Source of the DNA: Mytilus californianus
Lineage: Eukaryota
Assembly: GCF_021869535.1 (NCBI RefSeq)
Contig: NW_026262745.1
Coordinates: forward strand, 24,304,001-24,368,000
DNA: 64,000 nt
Direction of reading: 5' to 3'
Positions 2-62,167 of the stretch are shown piece after piece. A program made the position numbers and the translations under genes. The number at the start of each line of letters is the position of its first letter. Within the stretch, counting starts at the first letter, position 1. The notes beneath the pieces were generated by a model. It was not told the DNA's origin. It worked only from the letters and a program-made list of their open reading frames with translations, and ran no database searches.

Positions 2-2567
2 CCAGAAAGAGTGAAAATAGGTCTAATAGGGAGATTAAGTCCAACCACACCTCCTAAGTCCCCAAACATGATAGTCACTGCAAGATCGCAGAAATCTCCA
101 TTATACATTAGAAAGGATGGGTTTGTTTCTGCGGATGAATATGATGAACTCAGACTGGAACTGACTAAGCGGGATAATGCAATTCAAGAGTTAACCAGCA
201 GGTACAGTTTGTTTGTAATTTTGAGGCATTCTGAGTTAGGAAGTTGTGTTCTGTCTTTTCTTTGTGGAAGAGATTGAGACAAAGTAGATTATATTATAAG
301 CATTCAAAATATGTTTCCTTAACTTCCAGTGACAAATATTTCATATAAATGCAGAGCGGCTGATCACATAACTATCACAGAAGGTAATTTTTATATCACA
401 CATGTTGATGATTAGATGTATTTGGTTGTCGTCTCAAAGTATTTGATTAATATGTTTTCATATGTTATATACTTTTGCTCTGCCTTAGATACACCTGTAT
501 AGAGGTTAATTAAAGAAACATTCGAATACTGCAAATAGAGTATCAGAGCGACAGTGTAAAAAGAAAAAAAAAGTAAAATGTCTGAAAACAATAGAATAAA
601 TCTACAACTGGTAAACAACTTTAAAAAAACTGAGATAAACAAAAATAAACATATATGTAACCTATCATTCAATACGGCGCATCAACCATTTTAATTACAA
701 CAAACGCTTGAGAAATAACTTAAGGCACTAGCGCAACTTTAATACATGGGTATCATGTGATACATTACAGGGTCAGTGCGTTAGCCAATCAGCATATCTA
801 TGACGGGTTTCCTACATTTAAGTACGCCAATGAAACAGTCAATTCTACTAACATAGCTGAAAAATTTGCTCTCGTGTTTGAAAACGAATGGAAGGCAGCA
901 TATGAAGATTTAGCAGACAGAGGTTATCACGATGAAGAAATTGTATATAAGTTGATGAGAGTTATTAGGGTAGGTTTTGGTATATTTATCTTTCCTCTCT
1001 TGAGCTTAATTGATGAACTCATTTCAGAAAAGGTGTCCCATGAACAAAAAAAAAGATGATATATTTCGTTTGAGAATTCTTTTTTATGTTGAAATAGTGT
1101 AAAATGTATTAATTTGTTCAAATGATTTACTATGCACACCAGGCGTAAAGTGGCATAAGGAAAACATTTCAGCTTTTGCATGATTGCCAATGAGACAGCT
1201 ATCAACCAGAGTTCATTAAATTTTCTATATTTTTTTTTCATTTTAGTATGCATATCCATTCTGTCAACAAATAGCAGAGGACCAAATAATAGAACTCATT
1301 CACACAATGGAACATCCAAACGTTCGACAAAAGAATATTTACGCTTTAGACAAGGTAATATATATTATAACAAACAAATAGCTTAAATTAACAACTCCAT
1401 TTTGTTGTGTTTTTTTCTGTTTCCTTGACAAACTTGGTTGTGTTTTATCATGTGTTGTATATATCATTCTGCATGATTTCAATGTTCATCGACGATATTT
1501 TTTTCCATATTTTTGAGAGAGAAAAAAATATTTCGTTTATTTTTATGTTGTTAAACAAACTCTTCATACCAGATATCCGTCTTCGATTATAAGACAATCG
1601 TTTAATCATTTTTTTATGTTGCAGGGATCATTGATACACGGATATAAATCCCCACTTCAATTACCATCAGGGGTTGCTACGCGGTTAGCAAAGGAATACA
1701 GGAGAGCAAGTTCTACATTGTCTGTTCCTAGTGTTATACAGGTATTCGTTCAACATTATTCATAACTTCAAAATATCAAAGCGTATACTTAATAGGACCA
1801 TTAAAATCTTATGACAGTTATAGTAATTATAAATCATGAATTGCAAGTTAACAGCAAACAAATAATTACAACTACGCATGAAATTAAATGAAATCGAGAC
1901 ATATAATATTGCGAAGAGCAACTTTAAAAGACAGCGATTCTTTTAGAGTTTTAAAACAATCTGAAAAAATGGAACATGTGATAAATACCTTATACTTACT
2001 TGTCTTTTGACGTGCATTCTACCCTCGGACAAAACCCAATTATCAATGCACATAGCACTGACCATATTTCAACTATACATCCAATAATATACACCTATTT
2101 CCCTCATAATCAGTCATTAAGTGTTGTATCATACCGAACAGAACAACTGTCTAAAAAGTCTACATACAATAAATTATATTATTATTTGTTTAGACAAATT
2201 AGAGATTAAATACATCAGATTTGGAATGCATGAACTTTAAGATCAATTTACTCATTATTGCAAATACAAAGTTTTGTTTCATTTTCAGTATTTCAAGGAA
2301 TCTACAGCTTCTAGATTAGAACTCAACTATAAAACATTGGTTTCTATGAACTCATATATTGACAAATGTGTAGAACTCATATGGTACATGTGTGTACAAG
2401 ACCCATCGATGATTTTAAGATGGCCAGATCCGGACGATGCTGTGGACCCAACAATTTTTAAATACTACAAGAAAAAAGGAACTGTTGTCAAACATGCTGT
2501 ATGGCCGGCATTATATTTACATGACGCTGGTTTAATGTTAAAACGAGGCTGCGCAAGACCTTACTAA
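2..2567 (+). CDS. G1: Mieap (mitochondria-eating protein/SPATA18-like) domain protein, 5'-partial
   Basis: Hand-spliced join(<2..201,771..969,1247..1354,1625..1741,2289..2567). All introns GT-AG, phases 2,0,0,0, no stops, 300 aa in window. Motifs STNIAEKFALVFENEWKAAYE, AYPFCQQIAEDQI, YIDKCVELIWYMCVQDPSM and VWPALYLHDAG match the Mieap-domain pattern as I recall it. A short coiled-coil-like run (DELRLELTKRDNAIQELTSR) precedes the domain. Confidence 0.85.
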
Positions 2568-4081
2568 TCTGTTCTAGTATAATCTACTGCAAGGAATCTA
2601 AATTTATTTGATTTGTTTTCTCTAAAATCATTGTTCCAAAAATTAATGCGGTTTTAATGCTTGTCTATTACAATTAGCTTTAGTCGTCTCTCTATGTTAA
2701 ACAAGCTTTTTCATTTAAACACCAAATGGAGAAACGTAAGACAAAATAATTGAAACAAAACTCTTGCATTTTATAACTATCCTCTCACTGTCTCAAATGT
2801 GCTTTAGTTTGGAAAAACTTAATATTCAGATAACTATTTGATATTCCCCTTGTGATGTAAATGAACAGTTAACACTTTCCTCAAGTCTCGAGTGTCAAAA
2901 TAAAATTATTAAGACATGGTTCTTCAAAGCAGGGACATTACTAACATTTTGGAGTATTTGCCTCAGTAAGCGCTTCGTTGCAACGATATGTGTTTCCTTT
3001 AAACGATATTTATTGATTAATCATTGTATGTTTGAGTTATATTTTAGTTAGTTTAAATTAATGAATTTCAAATGAAAGTGTGAAACTTTTGTGTTATCAT
3101 CCATGTAATTGTTATCATATCAAATAGCCATTAAAGAAATGTTCACATTGCTGTAGTGGTGGTTTTAGTCCTGTGGTAGATAAAGGAAGAAAGGCTATTA
3201 CGGTCCTTATCTTCACAATGGCCTAAACATTATATCAGATTATATCCAATTACCATATAACTCCAACTCCCTCTACACTGAATCTGCCAACAGAACTTCA
3301 ACTTTAACACAAACAGCATTGCATCTCTTTTGGGGAATGATGTATTTGGTACTGTTCTTGTAGTTACATGTACGTACTGACTCTAAATTTATTTCTTGAA
3401 ATATGATTTCTCTTGCTTTGAATTGACATGTTGGTCACAGGAAATACAAATTCTTCTCAATAAGATATCTGTTGCAAGTAAAAGAGAGGCGAAAGATACC
3501 AAAGGGACATTCAAACTTATTAAGTCGAAAAGTAATGAGTAATAAAGTTGCGTTAAAGGCACTCCATACAGAAAAAAAACAGACGACAATACAAGACGCT
3601 GTTAAAATGCATAAAGATAATCACCCGTTTAGTGTTTTATCGTTTCGTCTGATTTGATGATTAACCGATTGGAACATCATGTCTGAGTTTCGAATCACAT
3701 GGCGTGTGATGCATACATACATGAAGACGCTCTCCCTGCCGACGCACACAGTCTCGTTCCTTATAGAGGCCATGCGATTCCCTTAGTATTTTATAAGGTT
3801 GTTTTCCCTTGGTTTGTGTTTTCTTAATGGATTTGTTACATTTGATCATCGGTAAACTACTGTTACTTGAATTTATTACCACTGGATTGTTATTGCTGTT
3901 GGAATATCAGTCCCAGAGGATATCATCCGCCAAGTAGTTAGTGATTCTGTATTGGTATGATTCAGATGCTAAATTTTGTGTGTTAATCCGTTAATGAAAT
4001 AATATTATTTTATTAAAGCTTAAGTTGCAACTTCAACTTACTTCAGGTAAATATCGTACTTGACGAATTTGGCTCAGCTTC

Positions 4082-8894: not shown

Positions 8895-11800
8895 ATGGAA
8901 GTCACGATATTCCGAGAATTGGAAGATTTTCTTGACCCCTTTCTGGATCCACAGAATGGACCAGTTCGTCCGGACAAGATGATGGCAGGCAGGGCATTAA
9001 TTGCGCTAGATGCTTTGATTAAAAACATGCCTGGTGTTACAGAAGACAGGGTAAGTAAAAAAAATCCATACGAATTAACTATACACCTCTGTCTAATTCT
9101 CATCAAGATAGCATATCATATTCAATACAGGACACAATACAAGTTAGCAATAATTTGAGATTCGTTAGTGTAGATGAAATGACAAGCGATCAATAAGAAA
9201 TACATACTCTAAATATAAACTTATCTTGATGTTACGATGGAACTATCATTTTACGGCTTATAGTGATACTGATGATCTAGTGTAACATAACAATATATGT
9301 TACTTTTCAATTGTTTTCATTACTTTTTTAAATACATTTTATATCAGGCTGTGAAGAATTTATTTTGGTTCGAAACTGTTAATTTCTGTGCTGACAATCG
9401 AAAATAGTATGCTCACATATGTTAAGACAAATACTGTTATAATTAAGTTTCGATTCTTGTAATAAAGCATTATAAAAGATGTTAATTGCCAGCAACTGAA
9501 TTGGTTTTTTTAACAATAATAATGTACAAAAACAAGTTTAAAACGTTCATAAACGTAAATCCTAGTAATCTATCTCCTACTTGACTACACATACAGGTAG
9601 AATCACTAAAGATTATGTTACAAGAAGCAATGAGGGGACGGTGGACATCTATGGACATGAGAATAGATGACGCAGTAGATCAATTCAATGAGATCAAACG
9701 AATGGCATTTGATGAGGTAAATAAACAAAATAATATATATCACTTACTGAATTTGATTTTTTTTTTGAGTAATCTGACCATACTGTTTCATTAAACTCTT
9801 TAAGTTGAACAATTAAAGATGGTTTTCAATGAAATAAATTATTCTTGATTTAAAAACCCAATGTAAAGTACATGTATATGGAAATGAACGTATTCACCAT
9901 AAAGCAATTAATATTATCATTCTTAACCTTTGCAATAAATCTGTAATTGCTCCTATAAATAAATAAATTTACGTAGATATAAAATTGAAACACAATTGAA
10001 ACATAACATATTTCTATCTGCATTTTCTATATTGCCAGGCTGTGCCAATTTCTACAGCTATTTATCTTTATTATAGCGCATATTGCACGACAGTAAACCA
10101 CAGTATTTATACAGCACCTCAAAGTCCAAATCTGCAAATCATCAAATATCACCTCGACCACTGTCAAAAAGACCGGCATATATTGACGGATTCACATTGA
10201 AAAATAAACCATCAGACAATGACGTTATAAACGCTGAAGGAACAGGAAGTGTTTTCAATATGAAAACGAGGATCAACAGAAACCCTGATGACCCTCTGAA
10301 TAGAGAGTTCACATTAGATGTAATAAGGCCAGGCACCAAAATACCACCTCCAACAGGACAAGACCTCGTCAACCGAAATACACTAATAAAAGAAGAGTAC
10401 AAAGACATGAAAAGCAGGTAATATAGACATAAATTTGCTTGCTCCTCTTATTGACGTGAAACTATGTTTCCCAAAGCATGCTCGACTTATTTAAACAGTT
10501 TTTATCCATAATAATTATCATTTGAAATGTCATCAATTTTAATGTACTTGAACAGATTTTCAAAATATACTATAGTTTTAATTTATCATAAAGTCGAACA
10601 ATAACTTCCTTATAGAAAGTAAGTATATATGACATCATATTCATGTTGCATTCAAAATTCTTGGCTTGAAATGCCTCCAATTGCTATATTTTTTTAGTAT
10701 AGCGTGTCCATTTTGCAGATAAATATAAAGAGGATAATGAAGCAAAAAGTAGTTTTAGAATAAAAATAGTCGACAAAAACTAGAGAGATTAAACAATGCA
10801 AACGTCACTACAATACAAGCGGGTGGTCCAGAAGAGTAAACAGATCCTGCTACTTTTGGCACCTTTCGGGTTACTCTTGACATTTAACGGTTACAAGATG
10901 TCATGATGCATCTTACCATCATTGAAAGTATCTGTAGGTACATGTACACCTTACTTCTAGTCTAACGAAGTGATTACAATTTTTCCCAAAATATCAATAC
11001 GTGCATTTTATTACAGATATAGCGAACTCCGGATTCCTGCAACAGTCCCCGAAATTTCAACACGTTCCTATATTCCATCTCAGGTGCTAACAAATAACCC
11101 AACCAAAATTGCTGATCTATTTACCAAACTGTTTGATGTGGAATGGGCTGATGCTTTTGAACAAGTCTGCAGAAATCGAATAGGTGTACCTGAAGTAAAG
11201 ATAATTGTCGATTTAGCCGATATACTGAAGGCAAGTAAATTGTATGATACATATGAAATAGGTTTCTCACGTAAATAGTCTTTTAAATTTGTTCACCATC
11301 TTTTCTTACTCGGGTCGAATAGAGCCTGTCGTATTGTGAAGACACTTGTGTATGTTAAACTATAGGTTCAATGTATCCTTTGGTTATATGTGACATTGGG
11401 TGTCTACGTCATTGATGTATACCCCACATGTGGGGACGGCCAATTGATTTTCTCGGATATTCAGGATATTTCGCAAATGAAGTATTCATTTTATCCTGTT
11501 GCTATGCCGGCTTATGTAATTGGTGCAGCTGTGCTTTTCGGTTTTGTACAAAATTATTTGCTGCATTTCGTGGAGATATCTGTACTGATTCAATTTTGGA
11601 AAATATATCGGAAAATATATTTTTGTATGTGTGTTCTAATGCATTATTGTAAGCGTTATAGACATTATTGTGTGTGTTTGTGTATTGAGATATATCGACT
11701 TAAACTGCTTCCATTGTCTCTAATTCAGAAATCCTTTCAATATACCCGTGAAGAAGCAAGAAACTTGATTGACAGCATGGCATTAAGAGTTCACGATACC

Positions 11801-15804: not shown

Positions 15805-15828
15805 CCCCCCCCCCCCCCCCCCCCCCCC
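15805..15828. repeat. Poly-C tract (24 nt)
   Basis: Direct homopolymer run. Confidence 0.95.
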
Positions 15829-22382: not shown

Positions 22383-22469
22383 CGACTTCTATATCAGACA
22401 TTTATTGCATTGTCAAATATGAATATTAAAATATAAAATCCTATTATTTAGGCTTGCGTTCTTACAATA

Positions 22470-26080: not shown

Positions 26081-26134
<54 letters not shown>

Positions 26135-41800: not shown

Positions 41801-41997
41801 ACACATTAACAAATGCATGAACCATCTTCAAGTGTAAATTTTCTAATCCAAATACTTAATGTTTAAAAATTGAAACAGTTTATAGTGCAAAAGACAGCAA
41901 GGACCGTGTCCGATAAAAAAAAAGAACATATATATGACAATTAAAAATCCGATAAGTAGAATTCGTAGAATCCAATGTAATCCATGTGGCTCTAGCA
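37536..41997. repeat. 2.24-kb tandem duplication containing the last exon and 3' UTR of G5
   Basis: Copy 1 is 37536..39760, an 11-nt filler CATTGTTTTTG follows, and copy 2 is 39772..41997 (offset 2236). Duplicated ORF pairs (38358/40594, 38663/40899) are identical. Confidence 0.92.
40851..41132 (+). other. Duplicate terminal exon of G5 (intact acceptor, ORF and poly(A) signal)
   Basis: ACAG| acceptor at 40849-50, same 93-aa translation as 38615..38896, AATAAA near 41357. Confidence 0.8.
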
Positions 41998-44900: not shown

Positions 44901-46090
44901 TGGAGGTTATTTTTCTATAAAAGTGCTCCAGACGTACCAAATATATATAGTGTTAATTCATATTTAAGCTGAATTCTTGAAAATGTATTCATCAAGCTTT
45001 TGTTATTTCATTTTATTTTTCATCATGCTGTTAAGGAAATATGAGTGAGTATTGCATGGTTTTGGACATGTAAATAAAATTGACCAAATGTACTCGAATC
45101 ATCATGTAGTCAAACCCGGGGATATTCTGGTAGAACTATAGAAAATATAAGTTGTCTATGCTGATTAAATGAAAGAAAGACTATATTTAAGTTGAAAAAA
45201 GTTAAAATGGTGGTTTCGCGAGAACATATTTGACCAATCATGTACAGTCAAATGTTCCTTTATGATACACAATTGTTGATGGATGGTCTAAATCGTTAAC
45301 GTTATACAATAACAGCAAACAAACTGACTGAATGTACCTAGATGGCCTACCTAATTTGTTCTTTTGATGCCATATATGTGGGCTGTAATGTTCATATACA
45401 GATCTTTCTTGAACAGTTTAAAACTTCAATTGTGGGCTGTATAGTGCCACACAAATTTTCGAAATAGGAAATATTTTATTGATGTATTGCTGGTATTAAC
45501 ACAGTAATAGGTCCGAGGACACAGTTACGTCCTTAGATTTTCGTTGTCTACAAATATAGTCCCTAGTGTGGACAGTGTATAACTTGCTAAATTTTTTCAT
45601 ACACTTTCCAAATTTATTTCTTTATATTTTATGCATGAAATATTAAGTAAGGGGATGAAATTACATGTTAAAAAAATTTGGTAGCTGAATCTTTATGTTA
45701 AGCAGTGATGCATGTTTATGTAAGGCTCCCCTTAATTCGAAAATCTCTATTTTCAGGCACAGGCTCATATGAATTTGACTTTTGAATAATTGTAATAAAT
45801 CTGATAAATCAAATGAGTGTTCAGTTGCTTTTAATACCTAATATATTATATTTAAGAGCATTTAAAAAGCAAATTTTTGCAATATTTAAATTTTTTAAGC
45901 CCAAATCTTGATAGTTGAAATTATTTGATTTAAACGTCAAAGTTAAACATTCAAATTTTAGTATTAAAATGGCCATAGTTTCTATAATGTATATCCTATG
46001 ACCATGAAACTTTGCCAACTATCTTATAATTCCCTAAGCTTAAATCATGCAAAGTTTTATTAGAATTGGTCAAGTCTTTCTATACTATTA

Positions 46091-46529
46091 GGTCCGAGGA
46101 CACAGTTATCGTCCTTAGATTTGCATAGTCCCTAGTGTGGACAGTGTATAACTTGCTAATTTTTTCATACACTTTCCAAATTTATTTCTTTATATTTTAT
46201 GCATGAAATATTAAGTAAGGGGATGAAATTACATGTTAAACAAATTTGGTAGCTGAATCTTTATGCTAAGCAGTGATTTGGTCCAGTTAAAAAAAGGTCA
46301 AAAACTAGTATGTCTGAAACTGTCAAACTGAATTTTAGACCACCTTCACATAGAATTGTCAATATTTTGAGTTAGAGCTGGTAAAATTTTCTATAATTTT
46401 GATATTATTTGTCTCAATAGTAGTACACAACACTGTAAAAATCTTTTTGAGATAGAGCAGGTGCGATTTTTTTAATTTGACTTTATTGTCTAAAAGAAAT
46501 GCACTACGAAATAACTGTGTTCTCGGGCC
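46091..46529. mobile_element. ~440-bp MITE with TA flanks (representative copy; 7 full copies and 1 partial in the array)
   Basis: TIRs GGTCCGAGGACACAGTTAT / ATAACTGTGTTCTCGGGCC (17/19 match), TA on both sides. Other copies: 47823-48261, 49553-49990, 52758-53197, 54491-54929, 56222-56660, 59417-59857. Confidence 0.82.
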
Positions 46530-49500: not shown

Positions 49501-50598
49501 CTTAAGTCATGCAAAGTTTTATTAGAATTGGTCAAGTCTTTCTATACTATTAGGTCCGAGGACACAGTTATCGTCCTTAGATTTTCATAGTCCCTAGTGT
49601 GGACAGTGTATAACTTGCTAATTTTTTTCATACACTTTCCAAATTTATTTCTTTATATTTTATGCATGAAATATTAAGTAAGGGGATGAAATTACATGTT
49701 AAACAAATTTGGTAGCTGAATCTTTATGTTAAGCAGTGGTTTGGTCCAGTTAAAAAAGGTCAAAAACTAGTATGTCTGAAGCTGTCAAACTGAATTTTAG
49801 ACCCCCTTAACATAGAATTGTCAATATTTTGAGTCAGAGCTGGTAGAATTTTCTATAATTTTGATATTATTTGTCTCAATAGTAGTACACTACACTGTAA
49901 AAAAATTTTCAGATAGAGCAGGTGCGATATTTTTAATTTGACTATATTGTCTAAAAGAAATGCACTACGAAATAACTGTGTTCTCGGGCCTAAGAGATGA
50001 ATTCAGGAAATGTAGATTCTGTACTTTGACAACGTCCCTGAATGGTTTCCTGGTATCAATTTATTTGTCAAACTCAATAAAAGTAAAGGATTTACATCTT
50101 TATTTGAAAGAATTTTTGTAAAAATGTCCCATTTGACATTATACAGCTAGAATAAGCATTTTAAAGCAGTTTCCATTTTTAAGCCTAAGAGGCATGCTTA
50201 CTTTCTATCTGACAGTTTTTTATGCCTTGATATTTGTGTTTCTATGATTAATTCAAATTCTATTAACCATTTGTAAACTCTGAATATAGAGAAAAGTAGA
50301 TTATCACAGAAAAAAATGTGCAAAATGTGTTGTATTTAGACCCTGGTCGAACGGCCTGTTTAATGTATGTGAAATGTGAAGAGCTTTGTACATAAAATGT
50401 GTAGTCCATCATAAATATTTCACTAAATTTTTTAAAAAAAGCACTTGACAATGATCTGTGCACCTTATCCATTTCATATACTACCTTTATTTTCTTCTGT
50501 AGGATAGTATGTGGTTCAAATATATGCCAGTTGAGACTAAAACTAAATGCAAGTTTTCCATTGAAAAGTGAAAAAACTGTGCATCAGACCATACTGTT

Positions 50599-51770
50599 CA
50601 GACTTGGGGTCAATTATATTGGAATGTAATTAATTAAATTACACATTACATTGCAAAAATGATCAATTACACTAATTACCATTACATAGTTTTTGAGATG
50701 TAATTAATTAAATTACAATTACTTTACTAAAGTAATTAATTAAATTACACATTACATTTGATCATAGTTTTTTCAAACAATATATATAGCATGTGAAAAA
50801 GATTCATGTAAGCTTACAACATAGTTTTAGCATTGCATTTGATCATCATTTGCAGTTTTTAATGTTTTGTCATTTAGTCTGCATCTCTTTGGTCTGAACA
50901 CTTTGCCAGCAATTCTAAATAGTCTTTCGACAGGAGCTGATGTTGCATGTATTGCTAGATCATAAGATGTGTTGATAGAAGAGGGAATTTGTTCCTATTA
51001 ACTTGCCAATACATTGAGGGGTTTATTGACATCTCAGAAATGAAGTCATTAAATTAAACATAATATAAATTAAAAAATTATAAATAAATTTAAAAATGTC
51101 TCAATTCTTTTTTTTACTTTACATTATTAAAAAGTATGCTTGTCACAATATTGAAAATGATATTTAGTACAAACAATGTATAATGTCTAAATATTAGCAA
51201 TATTTTGCTAATTAGATAAAATACATGTAATAGTGGCATTGTCCCTAGGCTATTTTATTACACATTTTAATCTCATTAATTGCTGTTTGTTTTTTCAGCT
51301 GGTAATTTTATTTCTACAATCCTTTTGTGTATACTAATTTGACAAAACGATTGTGTGTAGTGATTTAAAATTCTAAATGAACTGTGTGATTCTCACTTTT
51401 TTTTTAAATTATAAGAGTATTGAGCAAACCATTCTGTATGTCAAATAAATAACATTGAAAAAAAAATAGGGAAAAAAATACAGACTTGTGTATTAAATAA
51501 GTATGTACCTGATATATTAATATTTGTAAAATAAATGTTATTTTACAACTTATATTAACATAATTTCTAATCATTATCACCATAAAAGTGCATGTAATTC
51601 AAATGTAATTCAAAAGTAATTTAGCATTACATGTTTTTTTCATTGTAATTAATTAAATTACCATTACATGTAATTAAAAGAATGCTCAATTACACATTAC
51701 ATTCAATTACATGGAAAATTGTAATGCATTACACTTAATTACCATTACATTTTCAATTACCCCATCCCTG
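50599..51770 (-). mobile_element. Non-autonomous hAT transposon (1172 bp) with a transposase dimerisation-domain remnant
   Basis: CAG...CTG termini, imperfect TIR CAGACTTGGGGTCAATT / AATTACCCCATCCCTG, 8-bp TSD ATACTGT(T/C), dense ATTAC/GTAAT subterminal repeats. The minus strand at about 50830-51040 gives frameshifted INPSMYWQVNRNKFPLLS / LAIHATSAPVERLFRIAGKVFRPKRCRLNDKT / KLQMMIKCN. Confidence 0.85.
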
Positions 51771-52023
51771 ATACTGTCTGCAAAACAAGTTGAATGCAAG
51801 AGTCCTTTTGCAATTAGACTTCTTGTATCATGACATCTTAGCATAGAAATGAGCAAAAAGTAACAAATTTCCATTTCTTATAGCTTCTGTATGCATTTTT
51901 ATATGTAAATATGTGCTACGGCCTAAATTGACTCTTACATAGCCTAAGACCATTTTATATTCATTTGGTATGCTTTTTGTTTTCTTTCCATTTAGAGTAC
52001 ATTAATATATATGGAAGAATAAT

Positions 52024-52331
52024 ATATCGTAACTACAATACCCTTCCCTTTTCACGAATGTGACTTACCGAATTAGACTATTTACCGGATATGTAATAAC
52101 ATAAGCAACTCGACGGGTGCCACATGTGGAGCAGGATCTGCTTACCCTTCCGGAGCACCTGAGATCACCCCAAGTTTTTGGTGGAGTTCGTGTTGCTTAG
52201 TCTTTAGTTTTCTATGTTGTGTCATCTGTACAATTATTTGTCTGTTTGTCTTTTTATTTTTGGCCATGACGTTGTCAGTTTGTTTTCGATCTATGAGTTT
52301 GACTGTCCCTCTGGTATCTTTCGTCCCTCTT
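52024..52331 (-). mobile_element. ~308-bp Helitron/Helentron-like dispersed repeat inserted in an array monomer
   Basis: Interrupts GAATAAT|TTATGG, which is intact in the other monomers. No TSD. Same family as 20048-20227. Confidence 0.7.
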
Positions 52332-55300
52332 TTATGGTAAAAAAACTTCAAAAACTTCAAATTGGTTGAAAAAAATGCATGTTTATGTAAGGCTCCCCTT
52401 AATTCGAAAATCTCTATTTTCAGGCACAGGCTCATATGAATTTAACTTTTGAATAATTGTAATAAATCTGATAAATCAAATGAGTGTTCAGTTGCTTTTA
52501 ATACTTAATATATTATATTTAAGAGCATTTAAAAATCACATTTTGGCAATATTTAAATTTTTTAAGCCCAAATCTTGATAGTTGAAATTGTTTGATTTAA
52601 ACGTCAAAGTTAAACATTCAAATTTCAATATTAAAATGGCCATAGTTTCTATAATGTATATCCTATGGCCATGAAACTTGGCAAACTATCTTATAATTCC
52701 CTAAGCTTAAGTCATGCAAAGTTTTATTAGAATTGGTCAAGTCTTTCTATATTATTAGGTCCAAGGACACAGTTATCGTCATTAGATTTTCATAGTCCCT
52801 AGTGTGGACAGTGTATAACTTGCTAATTTTTTTCATACACTTTCCAAATTTATTTCTTTATATTTTATGCATAAAATATTAAGTAAGGGGATGAAATTAC
52901 ATGTTAAACAAATTTGGTAGCTGAATCTTTATGTTAAGCAGTGGTTTGGTCCAGTTAAAAAAGGTCAAAAACTAGTATGTCTGAAGCTGTCAAACTGAAT
53001 TTTAGACCCCCTTAACATAGAATTGTCAATATTTTGAGTCAGAGCTGGTAATATTTTCTATAATTTTGATATTATTTGTCTCAATAGTAGTACACTACAC
53101 TGTAAAAAAAATTTTTGAGATAGAGCAGGTGCGATATTTTTAATTTGACTTTATTGTCTAAAAGAAATGCACTACGAAATAATTGTGTTCTCGGGCCTAA
53201 GAGATGAATTCAGGAAATGTAGATTCTGTACTTTGACAACGTCCCTGAATGGTTTGCTGGTTTCAATTTGTCAAACTCAATAAAAGTAAAGGATTTACAT
53301 CTTTATTTTAAAGAATTTTTGTAAAAATGTCCCATTTTGACATTATACAGCTAGAATAAGCATTTAAAAGCAGTTTCCATTTTTAAGCCTAAGAGGCATG
53401 CTGACTTTCTATCTGACAGCTTTTTATGCTTTGATATTTGTGTTTCTATGATTAATTCAAATTCTATTAACCATTTGTGAACTCTGAATATAGAGAAAAG
53501 TAGATTATCACAGAAAAAAATGTGCAAAATGTGTTGTATTTAGACCCTGGTGGAACGGCCTGTTTAATGTATGTGAAATGTGAAGAGCTTTGTACATAAA
53601 ATGTGTAGTCCATCATAAATATTTCACTAAATATGTAAAACAAGCACTTGAAAATGATCTGTGCACCTTATCCATTTCATATACTACCTTTTTTTTTATT
53701 CTGTAGGATAGTATGTGGTTCAAATATATGCCAGTTGAGACTAAAACTGCATGCAAGTTTTCCATTGAAAAGTGAAAAACTGTGCATCAGACCATACTGT
53801 CTGCAAAAAAAGTTGAATGCAAGAGTCCTTTTGCAATTAGACTTCTTGTATCATGACATCTTAGCATAGAAATGAGCAAAAAGTAACAAATTTCCATTTC
53901 TTATAGCTTCTGTATGCATTTTTATATGTAAATATGTGCTACGGCCTAAATTGACTCGTAATAATGTTCAGTCTTACATAGCCTAAGACCATTTTATATT
54001 CATTTGGTATGCTTTTTGTTTTCTTTCCATTTAAAGTACATTTAATATATATGGAAGAATAATTTATGGTAAAAAAAACTTCAAAAACTTCAAATTGGTT
54101 GAAAAAAATGCATGTTTATGTAAGGCTCCCCTTAATTCGAAAATCTCTATTTTCAGGCACAGGCTCATATGAATTTAACTTTTGAATAATTGTAATAAAT
54201 CTGATAAATCAAATGAGTGTTCAGTTGCTTTTAATACTTAATATATTATATTTAAGAGCATTTAAAAATCACATTTTGGCAATATTTAAATTTTTTAAGC
54301 CCAAATCTTGATAGTTGAAATTATTTGATTTAAACGTCAAAGTTAAACATTCAAATTTCAATATTAAAATGGCCATAGTTTCTATAATGTATATCCTATG
54401 GCCATGAAACTTGGCAAACTATCTTATAATTCCCTAAGCTTAAGTCATGCAAAGTTTTATTAGAATTGGTCAAGTCTTTCTATACTATTAGGTCCGAGGA
54501 CACAGTTATCGTCCTTAGATTTTCATAGTCCCTAGTGTGGACAGTGTATAACTTGCTAATTTTTTTCATACACTTTCCAAATTTATTTCTTTATATTTTA
54601 TGCATGAAATATTAAGTAAGGGGATGGAATTACATGTTAAACAAATTTGGTAGCTGAATCTTTATGTTGAGCAGTGATTTGGTGCAGTTAAAAAAGGTCA
54701 AAAACTAGTATGTCTGAAGCTGTCAAACTGAATTTTAGACCCCCTTCACATAGAATTGTCAATATTTTGAGTTAGAGCTGGTAAAATTTTCTATAATTTT
54801 GATATTATTTGTCTCAATAGTAGTACACTACACTGTAAAAATCTTTTTGAGATAGAGCAGGTGCGATTTTTTTAATTTGACTTTATTGTCTAAAAGAAAT
54901 GCACTACGAAATAACTGTGTTCTCGGGCCTAAGAGATGAATTCAGGAAATGTAGATTCTGTACTTTGACAACGTCCCTGAATGGTTTGCTGGTTTCAATT
55001 TGTCAAACTCAATAAAAGTAAAGGATTTACATCTTTATTTGAAAGAATTTTTGTAAAAATGTCCCATTTGACATTATACAGCTAGAATAAGCATTTGAAA
55101 GCAGTTTCCATTTTTAAGCCTAAGAGGCATGCTGACTTTCTATCTGACAGCTTTTTATGCTTTGATATTTGTGTTTCTATGATTAATTCAAATTCTATTA
55201 ACCATTTGTGAACTCTGAATATAGAGAAAAGTAGATTATCACAGAAAAAAATGTGCAAAATGTGTTGTATTTAGACCCTGGTGGAACGGCCTGTTTAATG

Positions 55301-57267
55301 TATGTGAAATGTGAAGAGCTTTGTACATAAAATGTGTAGTCCATCATAAATATTTCACTAAATATGTAAAAAAAAAGCACTTGACAATGATCTGTGCACC
55401 TTATCCATTTCATATACTACCTTTATTTTCTTCTGTAGGATAGTATGTGGTTCAAATATATGCCAGTTGAGACTAAAACTACATGCAAGTTTTCCGTTAA
55501 AATGTGAAAAACTGTGCATCAGACCATACTGTCTGCAAAAAAAGTTGAATGCAAGAGTCCTTTTGCAATTAGACTTCTTGTATCATGACATCTTAGCATA
55601 GAAATGAGCAAAAAGTAACAAATTTCCATTTCTTATAGCTTCTGTATGCATTTTTATATGTAAATATGTGCTACGGCCTAAATTAGCTCTCAATAATGTT
55701 CAGTCTTACATAGCCTAAGACCATTTTATATTCATTTGGTATGCTTTTTGTTTTCTTTCTATTTAAAGTACATTTAATATATATGGAAGAATAATTTATG
55801 GTAAAAAAACTTCAAAAACTTCAAATTGGTTGAAAAAAATGCATGTTTATGTAAGGCTCCCCTTAATTCGAAAATCTCTATTTTCAGGCACAGGCTCATA
55901 TAAATTTGACTTTTGAAAAATTGTAATAAATCTGATAAATCAAATGAGTGTTCAGTTGCTTTTAATACTTAATATATTATATTTAAGAGCATTTAAAAAG
56001 CAAATTTTTGCAATATTTAAATTTTTTAAGCTTAAATCTTGATAGTTGAAATTATTTGATTTAAACGTCAAAGTTAAACATTCAAATTTCAATATTAAAA
56101 TGGCCATAGTTTCTATAATGTATATCCTATGGCCATGAAACTTGGCAAACTATCTTATAATTCCCTAAGCTTAAGTCATGCAAAGTTTTATTAGAATTGG
56201 TCAAGTCTTTCTATTCTATTAGGTCCGAGGACACAGTTATCGTCCTTAGATTTTCATAGTCCCTAGTGTGGACAGTGTATAACTTGCTAATTTTTTTCAT
56301 ACACTTTCCAAATTTATTTCTTTATATTTTATGCATGAAATATTAAGTAAGGGGATGAAATTACATGTTAAACAAATTTGGTAGCTGAATCTTTATGTTA
56401 AGCAGTGGTTTGGTCCAGTTAAAAAAGGTCAAAAACTAGTATGTCTGAAGCTGTCAAACTGAATTTTAGACCCCCTTAACATAGAATTGTCAATATTTTG
56501 AGTCAGAGCTGGTAGAATTTTCTATAATTTTGATATTATTTGTCTCAATAGTAGTACACTACACTGTAAAAAAATTTTTGAGATAGAGCAGGTGCGATAT
56601 TTTTAATTTGACTTTATTGTCTAAAAGAAATGCACTACGAAATAACTGTGTTCTCGGGCATAAGAGATGAATTCAGGAAATGTAGATTCTGTACTTTGAC
56701 AACGTCCCTGAATGGTTTCCTGGTATCAATTTATTTGTCAAACTCAATAAAAGTAAAGGATTTACATCTTTATTTGAAAGAATTTTTGTAAAAATGTCCC
56801 ATTTGACATTATACAGCTAGAATAAGCATTTGAAAGCAGTTTCCATTTTTAAGCCTAAGAGGCATGCTTACTTTCTATCTGACAGTTTTTTATGCTTTGA
56901 TATTTGTGTTTCTATGATTAATTCAAATTCTATTAACCATTTGTAAACTCTGAATATAGAGAAAAGTAGATTATCACAGAAAAAAATGTGCAAAATGTGT
57001 TGTATTTAGACCCTGGTCAAACGGCCTGTTTAATGTATGTGAAATGTGAAGAGCTTTGTACATAAAATGTGTAGTCCATCATAAATATTTCACTAAATAT
57101 GTAAAAAAAGCACTTGACAATGATCTGTGCACCTTATCCATTTCATATACTACCTTTATTTTCTTCTGTAGGATAGTATGTGGTTCAAATATATGCCAGT
57201 TGAGACTAAAACTATATGCAAGTTTTCCATTGAAAAGTGAAAAAACTGTGCATCAGACCATACTGTC

Positions 57268-58429
57268 CAGACTTGGGGTCAATTACATTGGAATGTAATT
57301 AATTAAATTACACATTACATTGCAAAAATGATCAATTACACTAATTACCATTACACAGTTTTTGATATGTAATTAATTAAATTACAATTACTTTACTAAA
57401 GTAATTAATTAAATTACACATTACATTTGATCATAGTTTTTTCAAACAATATATATAGCATGTGAAAAAGATTCATGTAAGCTTACAACATAGTTTTAGC
57501 ATTGCATTTGATCATCATTTGCAGTTTTTAATGTTTTGTCATTTAGTCTGCATCTCTTTGGTCTGAACACTTTGCGAGCAATTCTAAATAGTCTTTCGAC
57601 AGGAGCTGATGTTGCATGTATTGCTAGATCATAAGATGTGTTGATAGAAGAGGGAATTTGTTCCTATTAACTTGCCAATACATTGAGGGGTTTATTGACA
57701 TCTCAGAAATGAAGTCATTAAATTAAACATAATATAAATTAAAAAATTATAAATAAATTTAAAAATGTCTCAATTTTTTTTTTACTTTACATTATTAAAA
57801 AGTATGCTTGTTACAATATTGAAAATGATATTTAGTACAAACAATGTATAATGTCTAAATATTAGCAATATTTTGCTAATTAGATAAAATACATGTAATA
57901 GTGGCATTGTCCCTAGGCTATTTTATTACACATTTTAATCTCATTAATTGCTGTTTGTTTTTTCAGCTGATAATTTTATTTCTATAATCCTTTTGTGTAT
58001 ACTAGTTTGACAAAACGATTGTGTGTAGTGATTTAAAATTCTAAATGAACTGTGTGATTCTCACTTTTTTTTTTAAATTATAAGAGTATTGAGCAAACCA
58101 TTCTGTATGTCAAATAAATAACATTGAAAAAAAAATAGGGAAAAAAATACAGACTTGTGTATTAAATAAGTATGTACCTGATATATTAATATTTGTAAAA
58201 TAAATGTTATTTTACAACTTATATTAACATAATTTCTAATCATTATCACCATAAAAGTGCATGTAATTCAAATGTAATTCAAAAGTAATTTAGCATTACA
58301 TGCTTTTTTCATTGTAATTAATTAAATTACCATTACATGTAATTAAAAGAATGCTCAATTACACATTACATTCAATTACATGGAACATTACACTTAATTA
58401 CCATTACATTTTCAATTACCCCATCCCTG
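57268..58429 (-). mobile_element. Second copy of the non-autonomous hAT element (1162 bp)
   Basis: Perfect 8-bp TSD ATACTGTC at 57260-67 and 58430-37. Same position in the monomer as the first copy; 10 bp shorter near the right end. Confidence 0.85.
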
Positions 58430-58682
58430 ATACTGTCTGCAAAAAAAGTTGAATGCAAGAGTCCTTTTGCAATTAGACTTCTTGTATCATGACATCTTAG
58501 CATAGAAATGAGCAAAAAGTAACAAATTTCCATTTCTTATAGCTTCTGTATGCATTTTTATATGTAAATATGTGCTACGGCCTAAATTGACTCTTACATA
58601 GCCTAAGACCATTTTATATTCATTTGGTATGCTTTTTGTTTTCTTTCCATTTAGAGTACATTAATATATATGGAAGAATAAT

Positions 58683-58990
58683 ATATCGTAACTACAATAC
58701 CCTTCCCTTTTCACGAATGTGACTTACCGAATTAGACTATTTACCGGATTTGTAATAACATAAGCAACTCGACGGGTGCCACATGTGGAGCAGGATCTGC
58801 TTACCCTTCCGGAGCACCTGAGATCACCCCAAGTTTTTGGTTGGGTTCGTGTTGCTTAGTCTTTAGTTTTCTATGTTGTGTCATCTGTACTATTATTTGT
58901 CTGTTTGTCTTTTTATTTTTGGCCATGACGTTGTCAGTTTGTTTTCGATCTATGAGTTTGACTGTCCCTCTGGTATCTTTCGTCCCTCTT
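58683..58990 (-). mobile_element. Second copy of the Helitron/Helentron-like insertion
   Basis: Offset 6659 from 52024, same insertion site. Confidence 0.7.
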
Positions 58991-60866
58991 TTATGGTAAA
59001 AAAACTTCAAAAACTTCAAATTGGTTGAAAAAAATGCATGTTTATGTAAGGCTCCCCTTAATTCGAAAATCTCTATTTTCAGGTACAGGCTCATATGAAT
59101 TTAACTTTTGAATAATTGTAATAAATCTGATAAATCAAATGAGTGTTCAGTTGCTTTTAATACTTAATATATTATATTTAAGAGCATTTAAAAATCACAT
59201 TTTGGCAATATTTAAATTTTTTAAGCCCAAATCTTGATAGTTGAAATTATTTGATTTAAATGTCAAAGTTAAACATTCAAATTTCAATATTAAAATGACC
59301 ATAGTTTCTATAATGTATATCCTATGGCCATGAAACTTGGCCAACTATCTTATAATTCCCTAAGCTTAAGTCATGCAAAGTTTTATTAGAATTGGTCAAG
59401 TCTTTCTATACTATTAGGTCCAAGGACACAGTTATCGTCCTTAGATTTTCATAGTCCCTAGTGTGGACAGTGTATAACTTGCTAATTTTTTTCATACACT
59501 TTCCAAATTTATTTCTTTATATTTTATGCATGAAATATTAAGTAAGGGGATGAAATTACATGTTAAAAAAAATGGGTAACTGAATCTTTATGTTAAGCAG
59601 TGATTTGGTCCAGTTAAAAAAGGTCAAAAACTAGTATGTCTGAAGCTGTCAAACTGAATTTTAGACCCCCTTAACATAGAATTGTCAATATTTTGAGTCA
59701 GAGCTGGTAGAATTTTCTATAATTTTGATGTTATTTGTCTCAATAGTAGTACACTACACTGTAAAAATCTTTTTGAGATAGAGCAGGTGGGATTTTTTTT
59801 TAATTTGACTTTATTGTCTAAAAGAAATGCACTACGAAATAACTGTGTTCTCGGGCCAATAAACTCATCGTAGATAACAGGATTAAAATTTAGATCTGTT
59901 TTTGTTCAGTCAATAATGAAAGTGAAATAGTGAAATAATAATTCGCTTTTAGCAACAAGTTTTGTCAAAATAAGAAACATCGCTGATGAAATAGTCACTT
60001 GGAAGTGAATAATTTGACCTCATTAAATCCGTAACTGGTGACCTTCAATTTAACTTAACCCCTTAGCTAGAGATGGGTTATGCATAAACTAGGCGTGTTC
60101 AGCTATTAAAAGGAAAAGAATATCAACATTGAAAGTGAAACAAGGGTCCACCATTTGGTTGACTGATTCGATCCACAAAAACTCATTCTTATACAGAAAA
60201 AACAATGATTAATACATTTTTAACCTATAATATGAAACTAAACAGACCTAGAAAAATCCAATTGCACGTGTTCACTATCTATTTATATCTTTATTTATGT
60301 ATATATCGGGTTATATGACCATCTGCAGTCTTCGGAGGTCACCTCGATGGTTAATTAGATGGCGTATAGACTAAAATACACACGAAATGCGGATACATAT
60401 TATCGAGTTCATGCATCGTAAATTATTTATTTTAGACTTTTCAGATTTGGATATACGTTTTAGTATGTTATAAATTAAAAATGAAAATTTGAGTCAAATC
60501 GATGAACATGAATTTGACAGATAATGCCCCCTTTAACATCAAATTGCATATTAGGCAGAATAATTTAGTGTTTTGACATGCTTAGTTTTACATTATAATG
60601 ATGAAAACAATTTTCAAAACAAAACAATTCACCAATTCACCTTTGGAGTTGGCTATGCACAAATGGATAGAAGTTATTTATATATTTGGTACTTGTATTG
60701 TTACTGCCAATCTGTTAAAAACCATCCATTATTGTATTTGATTGATTAATCAAATGATAACATGCATTTATATACTTGTTAAAGATAAATTAAAGCCCTT
60801 CGTGTTGTGTTACAAACGGTGGATGTATTTAAGTATCAGTTGAAGAAGGAATTAGAAATCACACTA

Positions 60867-62167
60867 ATGTCAAAGGTAAATTGTACATGTAAATGATCAT
60901 TTTACATTTTAAAAATTGTATTTCATAACCAAGATTTTTTGTTTTATTTCCAAGCTGATAAGTTTGCAACATTTATCACCTTCTAGGATGAAATATTCAA
61001 GTTCGAAATTATTATTTGATACACAAACACATCGAAACTATCCTTCTTTTTTATACAGAAATCGTTTAATTGAATATTTTTGTCATACTTCGGATAAACA
61101 ATTCACATTTAGATTCTAAACATGCATAGCAAACTGTTAATCTGGTATCTGTGATGAGTTAATGGTACTTCAGTAGAAATATTCAAGTTTAAGCAGTGTT
61201 GCTGCTTCAACTACATATTGAACTTCCGATCTCATTGCAAACGATATATAATTTAAAATAAAAACGTTATATCGTTTGTGCAGTTATAAAAATCGGTTAT
61301 AAAAAATAATTGTTAAGCGTATTGTGTCTAACTGTATTGTATCATGAGCTTTGGTTAATAGCTTACATCAATTAGGAGCGAGCAAAATTGTGTACCGACT
61401 TTTATTTCCTTGTTCCAGTTATTTTCATGCTGATAGCCGCTTTGTGTAGTTATTTCCTTGTTCCAGTTATTATCATGTTGGTAGCTGCTTTGTGCAGTTA
61501 TTTCCTTGTTCCAGTTATTATCATGTTGGTAGCCGCTTCGTGCAGTCTTTAAGTAAAGATATTGGGTATTATACGTAGAAAACACAATAACCAAATGCCA
61601 CAAACATTTGCGAAATGTTTAGTCAAAATATTGCGATGTCTAATATGCCTGTCTAAATGTTTGTTTTGTTTCTGCATTTTGCACCGCGATTGTCGTGTAC
61701 AATAGTAACAGTGTTTAATAGTTTGTCTTTATTGTTCACTTTAGTCTGTTGGTTGTTAATACTCAGCATATTTGTTCTCAAATTCACAGATGGAGCATTA
61801 TATCTCCTTCTAGCAAAGCATTCTGCTAAGCATGTCTTACACTTGAAGTGAGGTATAAACGTTAAATGCATCACTGTGACTTGAGAAAAAGAATAACAAT
61901 AAAAGAGATGTTCAGTTGTTTTTTAAAATGATTGTGAGGTTCCTGAATTAATAAACCATATCTTATTAGCCTGAAAAGTCTGTAGCTTTAATATGACATT
62001 GACATTTCATCTTGCAATTTTAGTTACAGTTTTCCTTCTCAGTACTGGACAGATTTATCCACGATGTTCAAAAACCGGTTGCACATCCAACTGCTGGCGA
62101 TGCTAAACGGGCTTCTTCTGCCATTGACGACATCATAAATAATGTTCCACTGATCGATGAATTAAAT
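60867..62167 (+). CDS. G6: 5' exons of a sixth family member (3' part not found in the window)
   Basis: ATG TCA AAG|GTAAAT (60867..60875) and exon 62024..62167 (TTTAG| ... AAT|GTGAGA) give MSK|LQFSFSVLDRFIHDVQKPVAHPTAGDAKRASSAIDDIINNVPLIDELN. This aligns with the first N-domain exon of G2-G5 and has the same 0/0 phases. The first exon is a best guess. Confidence 0.62.
61402..61545. repeat. 48-bp tandem repeat, 3 copies
   Basis: Unit TTATTTCCTTGTTCCAGTTATT(T/A)TCATG...GTG(T/C)AG starting at 61402, 61450 and 61498. Confidence 0.9.

What the first reader, a model, noticed from the sequence alone, without database searches (positions are those of the whole stretch)
2..62167. Tandem cluster of six highly diverged Mieap-domain genes: a candidate expanded, uncharacterised bivalve effector family
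Seen: five paralogs splice to open frames with the same intron phases (phase 2 before the Mieap-domain exon, 0 elsewhere), and a sixth begins at the window end. The paralogs are very divergent outside a few motifs, yet no stop or frameshift was found in any modelled exon, which implies purifying selection on old duplicates. Established: vertebrate SPATA18/Mieap is a single p53-inducible gene for mitochondrial quality control. Inference: clustering, divergence and modularity like this usually mark immune or stress-effector families, so this may be a redeployed system rather than a simple Mieap ortholog set.
Basis: partly seen in the sequence, partly recalled or inferred. Interest (0 to 1): 0.8.

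Follow-up and report, generated by a model that had tools for sequence, protein, structure and literature searches.

The report
Mussel cluster of Mieap-domain genes
This stretch of the California mussel genome really holds six neighbouring, intact, very diverged genes of the "mitochondria-eating protein" (Mieap) family, but the family's expansion in bivalves is already published, and the genes look like conserved intracellular proteins, not fast-evolving immune effectors.

Summary
The window is Mytilus californianus, GCA_021869535.1 JAKFGE010000009.1, 24,304,001-24,368,000. It carries five complete or nearly complete MIEAP (PF16026) genes, G1 to G5, and the first two coding exons of a sixth, G6. 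All my spliced models are open. They match the public product lengths (440, 449, 486, 371 and 376 aa). In all five the intron before the first MIEAP exon is phase 2 and every other intron is phase 0. A 1,488-nt spliced transcript contig confirms all seven G3 junctions.

- G4 lies on the minus strand, tail-to-tail with G3 and head-to-head with G5.
- The apparent sixth C-terminal exon is a 2.2-kb, 99.7 % identical duplicate of the G5 end.
- G1 belongs to a different subfamily from G2-G5.
- The cluster continues upstream of the window.

M. galloprovincialis has collinear one-to-one orthologues, and dN/dS is 0.13-0.20, so purifying selection is strong. I saw no evident signal peptide and no immune-type domain. 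The roughly 50-fold bivalve expansion of Mieap genes is already published (Regan et al. 2021, PMC8382680).

Most likely these are intracellular scaffold proteins built like vertebrate Mieap: a helical N-terminus, a disordered linker and a structured C-terminal domain. Their function is inferred, not shown.

The parts
2..2567 (+). G1, the last five coding exons (residues 141-440 of a 440-aa protein). Exons: 2-201, 771-969, 1247-1354, 1625-1741, 2289-2567.
   Evidence: The spliced translation is identical to P0038 residues 141-440. Pfam MIEAP scores 55 bits over profile positions 3-191. The gene starts about 1.4 kb before the window. In the tree it falls outside the G2-G5 clade.
8895..14337 (+). 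G2, 449 aa, seven coding exons: 8895-9050, 9597-9716, 10077-10417, 11017-11230, 11729-11833, 13033-13131, 14023-14337.
   Evidence: The annotated CDS start and product length (449 aa) come. The model is open and reaches exactly 449 aa, but it needs a GC-AG intron after 11230. The last exon scores 44 bits against MIEAP. Runs of the same study that hold spliced G3 hold 16-21 % of this stretch's words, close to the exon share.
17505..22382 (+). G3, 486 aa, eight coding exons: 17505-17525, 17898-18059, 18528-18653, 18977-19419, 20443-20653, 21134-21238, 21657-21758, 22092-22382.
   Evidence: All seven joints are GT..AG and lie in one 1,488-nt contig of run X1. Contigs of X2 and X4 show parts of the same structure. 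The translation is 486 aa, equal to the annotated length. Exon 4 (443 nt) encodes a 147-aa charged and polar linker.
25444..31675 (-). G4, 371 aa, eight coding exons on the minus strand: 31675-31661, 30979-30821, 30308-30189, 29379-29264, 28336-28141, 27780-27658, 26491-26387, 25725-25444.
   Evidence: Junctions were refined against P0005, to which G4 is 90 % identical. All introns are GT-AG. A 39-bp tandem repeat (26739-27571) sits in the intron between 27658 and 26491.
32285..38896 (+). G5, 376 aa, eight coding exons: 32285-32332, 33723-33884, 34331-34447, 34609-34700, 35089-35290, 36166-36285, 36932-37039, 38615-38896. Its ATG lies 610 bp from the G4 ATG, head-to-head.
   Evidence: The spliced translation is identical to P0015, which is XP_052077007/8, LOC127715032 of Mytilus californianus. 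MIEAP scores 32 bits over profile positions 2-194.
39772..41997 (+). A recent tandem duplicate of 37536-39760. It carries a second, nucleotide-identical copy of the G5 last exon at 40851-41132.
   Evidence: Self-BLAST gives 99.73 % identity over 2,226 bp. The 282-nt exon copies are identical; the five substitutions and one indel lie downstream of them. The public annotation lists a second 376-aa record ending on this copy, and two isoforms share one protein. The duplicate is absent from the M. galloprovincialis interval.
45708..59857 (.). A tandem array of about 14 kb with a unit near 1.73 kb, lying between G5 and G6. It is not part of any gene.
   Evidence: Self-BLAST gives 96-98 % identity between units. 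The flanks 45207-45509 and 60535-61384 lie only about 150 bp apart in M. galloprovincialis locus L004, so the array is an insertion or expansion in this genome.
60867..62167 (+). G6, the start only: an ATG exon at 60867-60875 and an exon at 62024 (or 62030)-62167. The rest lies beyond the window.
   Evidence: The region is collinear with the 5' end of an annotated 388-aa MIEAP gene in M. galloprovincialis. The ATG exon is conserved and the exon-1 peptide is nearly identical. A profile of the G2-G5 N-terminal parts hits this ORF as the best non-self match, at E = 0.014. No conserved open exon was seen in 62168-64000.

Best explanation
This is a local gene cluster in Mytilus californianus that belongs to the already described bivalve expansion of the Mieap/SPATA18 (Pfam MIEAP) family.

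Shown here:
- G2 to G5, and probably G6, arose by old local duplications of one ancestral gene with eight coding exons. G1 belongs to another branch of the family.
- Each protein has three parts. The first is an N-terminal helical module of about 100 aa. The second is a charged and polar linker of 30-147 aa, encoded by one exon, with low model confidence over part of it (residues 104-118 of the modelled G4 orthologue). The third is a confidently folded C-terminal MIEAP domain of about 235 aa, made of long helices and a small beta-sheet.
- The genes are intact and conserved one-to-one in a second Mytilus genome under strong purifying selection. Transcription is shown for G3 and suggested for G2.

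Inferred, not shown:
- Vertebrate Mieap has a hydrophilic N-terminal half with coiled coils and disordered regions, and a hydrophobic structured C-terminal half. The C-terminal half takes the protein to mitochondria and cardiolipin-type lipids, and the protein forms condensates. By analogy, I think the mussel proteins are intracellular scaffolds.
- In that reading the MIEAP domain anchors them to a membrane or lipid phase, probably mitochondrial. The diverged N-terminal module and linker would give each paralogue its own partners.
For: Family membership: Pfam MIEAP scores above threshold on all six C-terminal exon copies and over the full profile on G1, G5 and the G4 orthologue.

Gene structure: the exon structure and phases are shared.

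Transcription: RNA contigs give all seven G3 junctions.

Annotation: products of 440, 449, 486, 371 and 376 aa, all carrying MIEAP, are annotated at these positions.

Conservation: orthologous exons in M. galloprovincialis are 79-98 % identical in DNA and keep the same splice sites. dN/dS is 0.128, 0.125 and 0.202, lowest in the MIEAP part for G3 and G4.

Phylogeny: G2-G5 form one clade with SH-aLRT 98, and G1 falls outside it.

Structure: the AlphaFold model of P0005 has pLDDT above 90 over most of residues 157-371 (a loop near 230-250 is lower), about 70 over residues 1-104, and below 50 at 104-118.

Vertebrate mechanism: Ikari et al. 2024, PMC10845071.

Expansion: Regan et al. 2021, PMC8382680.

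Other bivalve data: MIEAP annotations are over-represented among gill-enriched genes of another mussel (PMC5549309). A Mieap protein changes in abundance in Dreissena exposed to cadmium (PMC11036304).
Against: - No localisation, lipid-binding or phase-separation data exist for any bivalve paralogue.
- The MIEAP parts of these proteins are not hydrophobic overall (GRAVY -0.26 to -0.55), unlike the description of the vertebrate C-terminal half.
- The N-terminal module has no detectable similarity to the vertebrate coiled-coil region.
- No near-consensus p53 response element occurs in the window (0 found, 0.7 expected), so p53 control is not indicated.
- The fold has no solved relative that could support a lipid-binding role.
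- G3 is almost silent in the one raw-read RNA run tested, so expression is conditional or tissue-limited.
Confidence: 0.8

Rival explanations
1. The cluster is a redeployed immune or stress-effector family, diversified by an arms race or by environmental stress, and no longer does Mieap-type mitochondrial housekeeping.
For: - Large lineage-specific expansions in bivalves often concern immune and stress genes, and Regan et al. list Mieap beside HSP70, C1q and B-box families.
- The paralogues are extremely diverged.
- Expression of G3 differs strongly between runs.
- A Mieap protein changes abundance under cadmium in Dreissena.
- An unchecked note of this scan reports a B-box/coiled-coil-Mieap fusion elsewhere in this genome.
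Against: - dN/dS between species is 0.13-0.20, and lowest in the domain in two of the three genes.
- Orthologues are one-to-one and collinear, and are present in several Mytilus species. This is the opposite of the turnover and presence/absence variation typical of mussel immune families.
- There is no evident signal peptide and no second Pfam domain in these proteins or in 14 larger relatives.
- No infection or stress expression data could be examined here.
Confidence: 0.12
2. The paralogues are specialised for mitochondria-rich ciliated or flagellated cells (gill epithelium, sperm). In this reading the expansion serves tissue-specific variants of one cell-biological function, not stress or immunity.
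For: - MIEAP annotations are over-represented among gill-enriched transcripts in Mytilisepta virgata (PMC5549309).
- The vertebrate gene is named for spermatogenesis (SPATA18).
- The nearest non-mollusc structural cluster in the ESM Atlas is from ciliates: TM 0.62 by the target over 186 residues of the domain.
- G3 is present in some RNA runs and nearly absent in another.
Against: The tissue of the runs is not known to me, because run ids are coded. The Atlas match compares two predicted models, and TM by the query is only 0.42. Nothing in the sequences points to cilia.
Confidence: 0.25
3. Some of the copies are decaying duplicates or assembly artefacts and not working genes. The candidates are the duplicated G5 end and G2 with its GC-AG intron.
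For: The 2.2-kb duplicate is 99.7 % identical and is absent from M. galloprovincialis. That pattern could come from a very young duplication or from a mis-assembly. G2 needs a non-canonical donor, and its junctions were not checked on reads.
Against: - All five genes have open frames that match the independently annotated lengths.
- G3, G4 and G5 show strong purifying selection.
- G3 is spliced exactly as modelled.
- RNA runs hold an exon-sized share of G2.
- The duplicate adds no new protein, because the exon copies are identical.
Confidence: 0.1

Closest known systems
Vertebrate Mieap / SPATA18 (Pfam PF16026 MIEAP)
   Same: The C-terminal domain of about 195 profile positions matches over its full length and above the Pfam threshold. 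The overall layout is the same: a hydrophilic helical N-terminal part, a disordered charged region, then the structured conserved domain near the C-terminus.
   Different: - Vertebrates have one gene. Here there are six within 64 kb, with more nearby.
- The mussel proteins are shorter (371-486 aa against 538 aa).
- They carry a different N-terminal module and lack the C-terminal disordered tail.
- No p53 element was found.
- Mitochondrial targeting, cardiolipin binding and condensate formation are untested.
The bivalve-expanded Mieap orthogroup OG24 of Regan et al. 2021 (PMC8382680)
   Same: It is the same Pfam family in the same animal class. The paper reports 807 genes, 53 per bivalve against 0.6 in other animals, with duplications dating to the bivalve ancestor. 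Relatives of the window genes occur in Dreissena, scallops, oysters, unionids, ark clams and Solemya.
   Different: In the passages I read, the paper treats the family only as a count and a tree. It does not describe this cluster, its exon-phase structure, the G2-G5 subfamily with its own N-terminal module, or selection on individual paralogues. M. californianus was sequenced later.
Tandemly expanded bivalve immune families (C1q-domain, TIR, B-box/TRIM-like genes and others)
   Same: Local clustering and deep divergence of paralogues within a lineage-specific expansion.
   Different: There is no secretion signal and no recognition or signalling domain. dN/dS is low, and one-to-one orthology and synteny hold between Mytilus species. 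So the resemblance stops at genome organisation.

Membership tests
Pfam PF16026 MIEAP (Mieap/SPATA18 family) | The sequence scores above the curated gathering threshold (27 bits) against the family HMM. | tested here: met
   Terminal exons alone score 38.7 (G1), 44.3 (G2), 38.7 (G3), 38.9 (G4) and 28.0 (G5 and its copy) bits. Full proteins score 55.3 (G1), 32.4 (G5) and 56.9 (G4 orthologue) bits.
Pfam PF16026 MIEAP (Mieap/SPATA18 family) | The match covers the whole domain and not a fragment. | tested here: met
   Profile positions 3-191, 2-194 and 1-193 of 195 are covered. The domain is split over the last four exons, and the first of these matches profile positions 1-41.
Mieap/SPATA18 as a functional system (vertebrate) | An amphiphilic layout: a hydrophilic N-terminal half with coiled coils and disordered regions, then a hydrophobic structured C-terminal half. 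| tested here: inconclusive
   The order helices, low-confidence linker, well-folded C-terminal domain is seen in the model, and the linkers are strongly hydrophilic (GRAVY down to -1.44). But the MIEAP parts are mildly hydrophilic overall (-0.26 to -0.55). No coiled-coil predictor was run.
Mieap/SPATA18 as a functional system (vertebrate) | Transcriptional induction by p53. | tested here: not met
   No two-decamer p53 element with at most one mismatch occurs in 64 kb, against 0.7 expected. This is a weak test: the mollusc p53-family site preferences are assumed, and elements could be degenerate.
Mieap/SPATA18 as a functional system (vertebrate) | Mitochondrial localisation, binding of cardiolipin-type lipids and formation of condensates. 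| not testable with these tools
   This needs cell imaging and lipid-binding and phase-separation assays. No solved structure or fold relative gives a hint.
Fast-evolving immune or stress-effector gene family | Raised dN/dS, gene turnover or presence/absence variation between close relatives. | tested here: not met
   dN/dS is 0.13-0.20. G3-G6 are collinear one-to-one with M. galloprovincialis. Clusters at 90 % identity include M. edulis, M. trossulus, M. galloprovincialis and M. coruscus proteins. Variation among individuals was not tested.
Fast-evolving immune or stress-effector gene family | A secretion signal, or a known recognition or signalling domain. | tested here: not met
   Pfam finds only MIEAP. 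The N-termini are charged and lack a hydrophobic leader by inspection. No signal-peptide predictor was available.

The most novel reading that the evidence does not exclude
The MIEAP domain may be a module that binds cardiolipin-type lipids, which are also found in bacterial membranes. The bivalve expansion, including this G2-G6 subfamily with its own N-terminal module, may have turned a single mitochondrial quality-control scaffold into a set of paralogue-specific intracellular coats or condensates. Some of these would act on targets other than the cell's own mitochondria, for example internalised bacteria or symbionts in a filter feeder. Nothing here tests this. The low dN/dS and stable orthology argue against an arms race but do not exclude a conserved defence or stress role.
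Probability: 0.08. Interest if true: 0.7.

Novelty: new member of a known kind. Interest (0 to 1): 0.25.

Why it matters
Bivalves hold about fifty Mieap-family genes where most animals hold one, and nobody knows what the extra copies do. This cluster is a compact, well-resolved example. It has six neighbours with one shared exon plan, very different N-terminal parts and linkers, and a strongly conserved C-terminal domain that has no solved structure. It offers ready constructs for testing whether the copies differ in place, partners or inducing stress. In itself it is an ordinary case of an already published expansion. The genes are already annotated in public databases.

Tried and rejected
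- Sequence search of the family profile against all solved structures gave only coiled-coil noise (best E = 0.018).
- Foldseek against the PDB found nothing at E <= 0.001. The exhaustive VIA-align search gave a best Z of 7.3, on the N-terminal helices only, and Z of about 6 on the domain. That is within the range the tool itself calls common for helical proteins. I therefore claim no fold relative. I also do not claim a new fold, because the domain was not folded alone.
- Pfam on 14 longer relatives (up to 2,606 aa), looking for fused immune or signalling domains, found only MIEAP, sometimes two or three copies, plus sub-threshold coiled-coil-like hits.
- A p53 response-element scan found none.
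- Junction scoring of G2 against its paralogues was too weak to fix the model, and a brute-force search left 10,575 solutions. The final G2 model rests on motif alignment, the annotated length and one GC-AG donor.
- Looking for further G6 exons in 62168-64000 by comparison with M. galloprovincialis found only non-coding conservation.
- One literature search was mis-set and returned nothing useful.
- Full-length G2 and G3 could not be sent to Pfam or to structure prediction, because spliced sequences have no reference.


Full report
**What the window is.** The window has 31 % G+C and no gaps. Exact look-ups place it in Mytilus californianus, assembly GCA_021869535.1, record JAKFGE010000009.1, positions 24,304,001-24,368,000.

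**Finding the genes.** Three of the longest ORFs hit Pfam MIEAP (PF16026) at about 1e-9, over the last 75 positions of the profile. Comparing all stop-to-stop ORFs with these three found six such C-terminal exons: 2241-2564, 13972-14334 and 22092-22379 on the plus strand, 25447-25782 on the minus strand, then 38597-38893 and 40833-41129 on the plus strand. All reach the Pfam threshold on their own. A second set of paralogous ORFs (724-1056, 10961-11275, 20435-20668, 28129-28338 minus, 35051-35311) matches the first 41 positions of the profile below threshold. So the domain is split over several exons.

**Gene models.** A search of 1.84 billion representative proteins with the G3 last exon found 931 representative proteins at E <= 0.001. 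Three of them are identical or nearly identical to window genes.
- P0038 (440 aa) is G1. The window holds residues 141-440, and the match is identical.
- P0015 (376 aa) is G5, identical over its whole length.
- P0005 (371 aa) is the M. galloprovincialis orthologue of G4, at 90 % identity.
- For G3, three public runs hold spliced contigs. One contig of 1,488 nt gives all seven joints, each GT..AG. The resulting CDS is 486 aa.
- For G2 I used motif alignment with the paralogues and the annotated product length. The model is open and gives 449 aa, but it needs one GC-AG intron. It is the least certain model.

The public annotation at these positions lists products of 440, 449, 486, 371 and 376 aa, all with MIEAP. 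My five models match these lengths.

**Phases and layout.** Intron phases are 0,0,0,2,0,0,0 in G3-G5, 0,0,2,0,0,0 in G2 (which lacks the short first exon) and 2,0,0,0 in the visible part of G1. G4 is on the minus strand. It is tail-to-tail with G3, with 3.1 kb between the stops, and head-to-head with G5, with 610 bp between the ATGs. The same arrangement holds in M. galloprovincialis, with about 605 bp between the two ATGs.

**The sixth gene and the sixth exon.** The exon at 40833-41129 is not a gene. The segment 37536-39760 is repeated at 39772-41997 with 99.73 % identity. The two copies of the last exon are identical base for base. The public annotation has two isoforms of LOC127715032 with one and the same protein, and a second record ending on the second copy.

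The real sixth gene starts at 60867 with a 9-nt ATG exon and continues with an exon at 62024-62167. Both are collinear with the start of an annotated 388-aa MIEAP gene in M. galloprovincialis, and the exon peptide is almost unchanged. A profile of the G2-G5 N-terminal parts hits this exon as the best non-self match in the window, though weakly (E = 0.014). Between G5 and G6 lies a 14-kb tandem array. Its two flanks are about 150 bp apart in M. galloprovincialis. One more MIEAP gene (601 aa) lies 7-10 kb upstream of G1, outside the window.

**How diverged, how old, how constrained.** The paralogues share 27-45 % identity in the MIEAP part and 20-29 % in the N-terminal part. In a maximum-likelihood tree of 57 full-length domains, G2-G5 form one clade (SH-aLRT 98). 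G1 groups elsewhere, with another M. californianus gene and a scallop protein. The sampling is biased, because it uses the best 150 hits to one exon, so the tree says little about where the clade began. An oyster protein (Saccostrea) that also matches the N-terminal profile sits next to the clade without support.

The M. galloprovincialis locus L004 has orthologues of G3, G4, G5 and G6 in the same order and orientation. I rebuilt the three complete orthologous CDSs, which are 485, 371 and 377 aa with all introns GT-AG. Nei-Gojobori estimates are:

| Gene | dN | dS | dN/dS |
|---|---|---|---|
| G3 | 0.037 | 0.288 | 0.128 |
| G4 | 0.047 | 0.378 | 0.125 |
| G5 | 0.071 | 0.352 | 0.202 |

The MIEAP part alone gives 0.086, 0.080 and 0.213. 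The linker is higher in G3 and G4 (0.23 and 0.28), on few sites. Clusters at 90 % identity contain proteins of M. edulis, M. trossulus, M. galloprovincialis and M. coruscus.

**Expression.** G3 is transcribed and spliced in three runs of one study. In a raw-read RNA run of the same species label, about 6 % of which was read, it is almost absent. Runs of the same study, two of them among those that hold spliced G3, hold 16-21 % of the words of the G2 stretch, near the exon share. This suggests G2 is transcribed but does not prove it. Tissues and treatments are unknown to me.

**What the proteins look like.** An AlphaFold model of P0005, built with a 54-sequence alignment, has mean pLDDT 81.8.
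- Residues 1-104 form four helices at pLDDT about 70.
- Residues 104-118 are below 50.
- Most of residues 157-371, the MIEAP domain, are above 90, apart from a loop near 230-250. The domain has long helices followed by a small beta-sheet that carries the most conserved motifs, including the invariant W351-P352 and several glycines.

The linker exon varies from 92 to 443 nt and encodes strongly hydrophilic, charged sequence. No solved structure is related by sequence or convincingly by fold. In the ESM Atlas the model matches mollusc MIEAP clusters and, more weakly, a cluster of ciliate proteins. Pfam sees no other domain in these proteins or in 14 longer relatives. By inspection, no N-terminus looks like a signal peptide.

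**Mechanism.** For vertebrate Mieap, Ikari et al. 2024 (PMC10845071) report that the N-terminal hydrophilic half, with coiled coils and disordered regions, and the C-terminal hydrophobic structured region are both needed for multi-phase mitochondrial condensates. They also report that the C-terminal region determines partition into mitochondria, and they suggest it binds cardiolipin-related lipids. The mussel proteins have the same order of parts. My best reading is that they are intracellular scaffolds whose conserved MIEAP domain provides the common anchoring activity, while the diverged N-terminal module and linker give each paralogue its own partners. This is inference. The MIEAP parts here are not hydrophobic overall, and no p53 element is present.

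**Comparison with what is known.** The expansion itself is published. Regan et al. 2021 (PMC8382680) list a Mieap orthogroup of 807 genes, 53 per bivalve against 0.6 elsewhere, with duplications in the bivalve ancestor, and they interpret it as part of an ancestral response to physical stress. A mussel expression atlas found MIEAP annotations over-represented in gills (PMC5549309). A proteomic study saw a Mieap protein change under cadmium in Dreissena (PMC11036304). I found no functional study of any bivalve paralogue. The genes of this window are annotated publicly as uncharacterised or MIEAP-domain proteins.

**Verdict.** The 'effector / redeployed system' reading is not supported by anything I could test, and conservation argues against an arms-race family. 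The finding is a well-resolved example of a known, functionally unexplored expansion.

**Earlier notes of this scan.** Another first-stage note reports a B-box-Mieap fusion elsewhere in this genome. I did not check it. Two further notes, one on this window and one on a stretch inside it, concern the N-terminal module and the 14-kb array. I partly checked both.

Noticed in passing
window 37536-41997: A 2.2-kb tandem duplication at 99.7 % identity gives G5 two base-identical last exons. The public annotation has two isoforms that encode one protein. The duplication is absent from the orthologous M. galloprovincialis interval. It is either very young or an assembly artefact.
   Followed up: partly
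window 45708-59857: A tandem array of about 14 kb, with a unit near 1.73 kb and 96-98 % identity between units, lies between G5 and G6. Its flanks are only about 150 bp apart in M. galloprovincialis, so the array arose or grew in the M. californianus lineage. Another note of this scan (s1-274979) links it to MITE ends. I did not test that.
   Followed up: partly
window 31661-32332: G4 and G5 start head-to-head, with 610 bp between their ATGs. The spacing is kept in M. galloprovincialis (about 605 bp). This is a candidate shared bidirectional promoter.
   Followed up: no
window 26739-27571: A 39-bp minisatellite of 21 copies at about 90 % identity lies inside a G4 intron.
   Followed up: no
window 11230-11729: The G2 model needs a GC-AG intron at this junction. 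It is the only non-GT donor among the 33 modelled introns and was not verified on reads.
   Followed up: partly
window 17001-17200, 20001-20200, 22401-22600: Three short stretches, two beside G3 and one in its intron, have very high contig and read depth (hundreds to thousands) in all RNA runs, with many loose ends. They behave like copies of abundant dispersed repeats transcribed elsewhere. The one at 20044-20280 shares a lysine- and arginine-rich ORF with units of the 14-kb array (52142-52435, 58801-59094).
   Followed up: no
model of P0005 (G4 orthologue), residues 150-367: The nearest non-mollusc structural neighbour of the MIEAP domain in the ESM Atlas is an unnamed cluster of ciliate proteins (TM 0.62 by the target, 186 residues aligned). 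This hints that the fold is much older than animals.
   Followed up: no
L003 1-3256 (7-10 kb upstream of G1, outside the window): Another annotated MIEAP gene (601 aa) lies on the same strand, so the cluster extends beyond the window's left edge.
   Followed up: no
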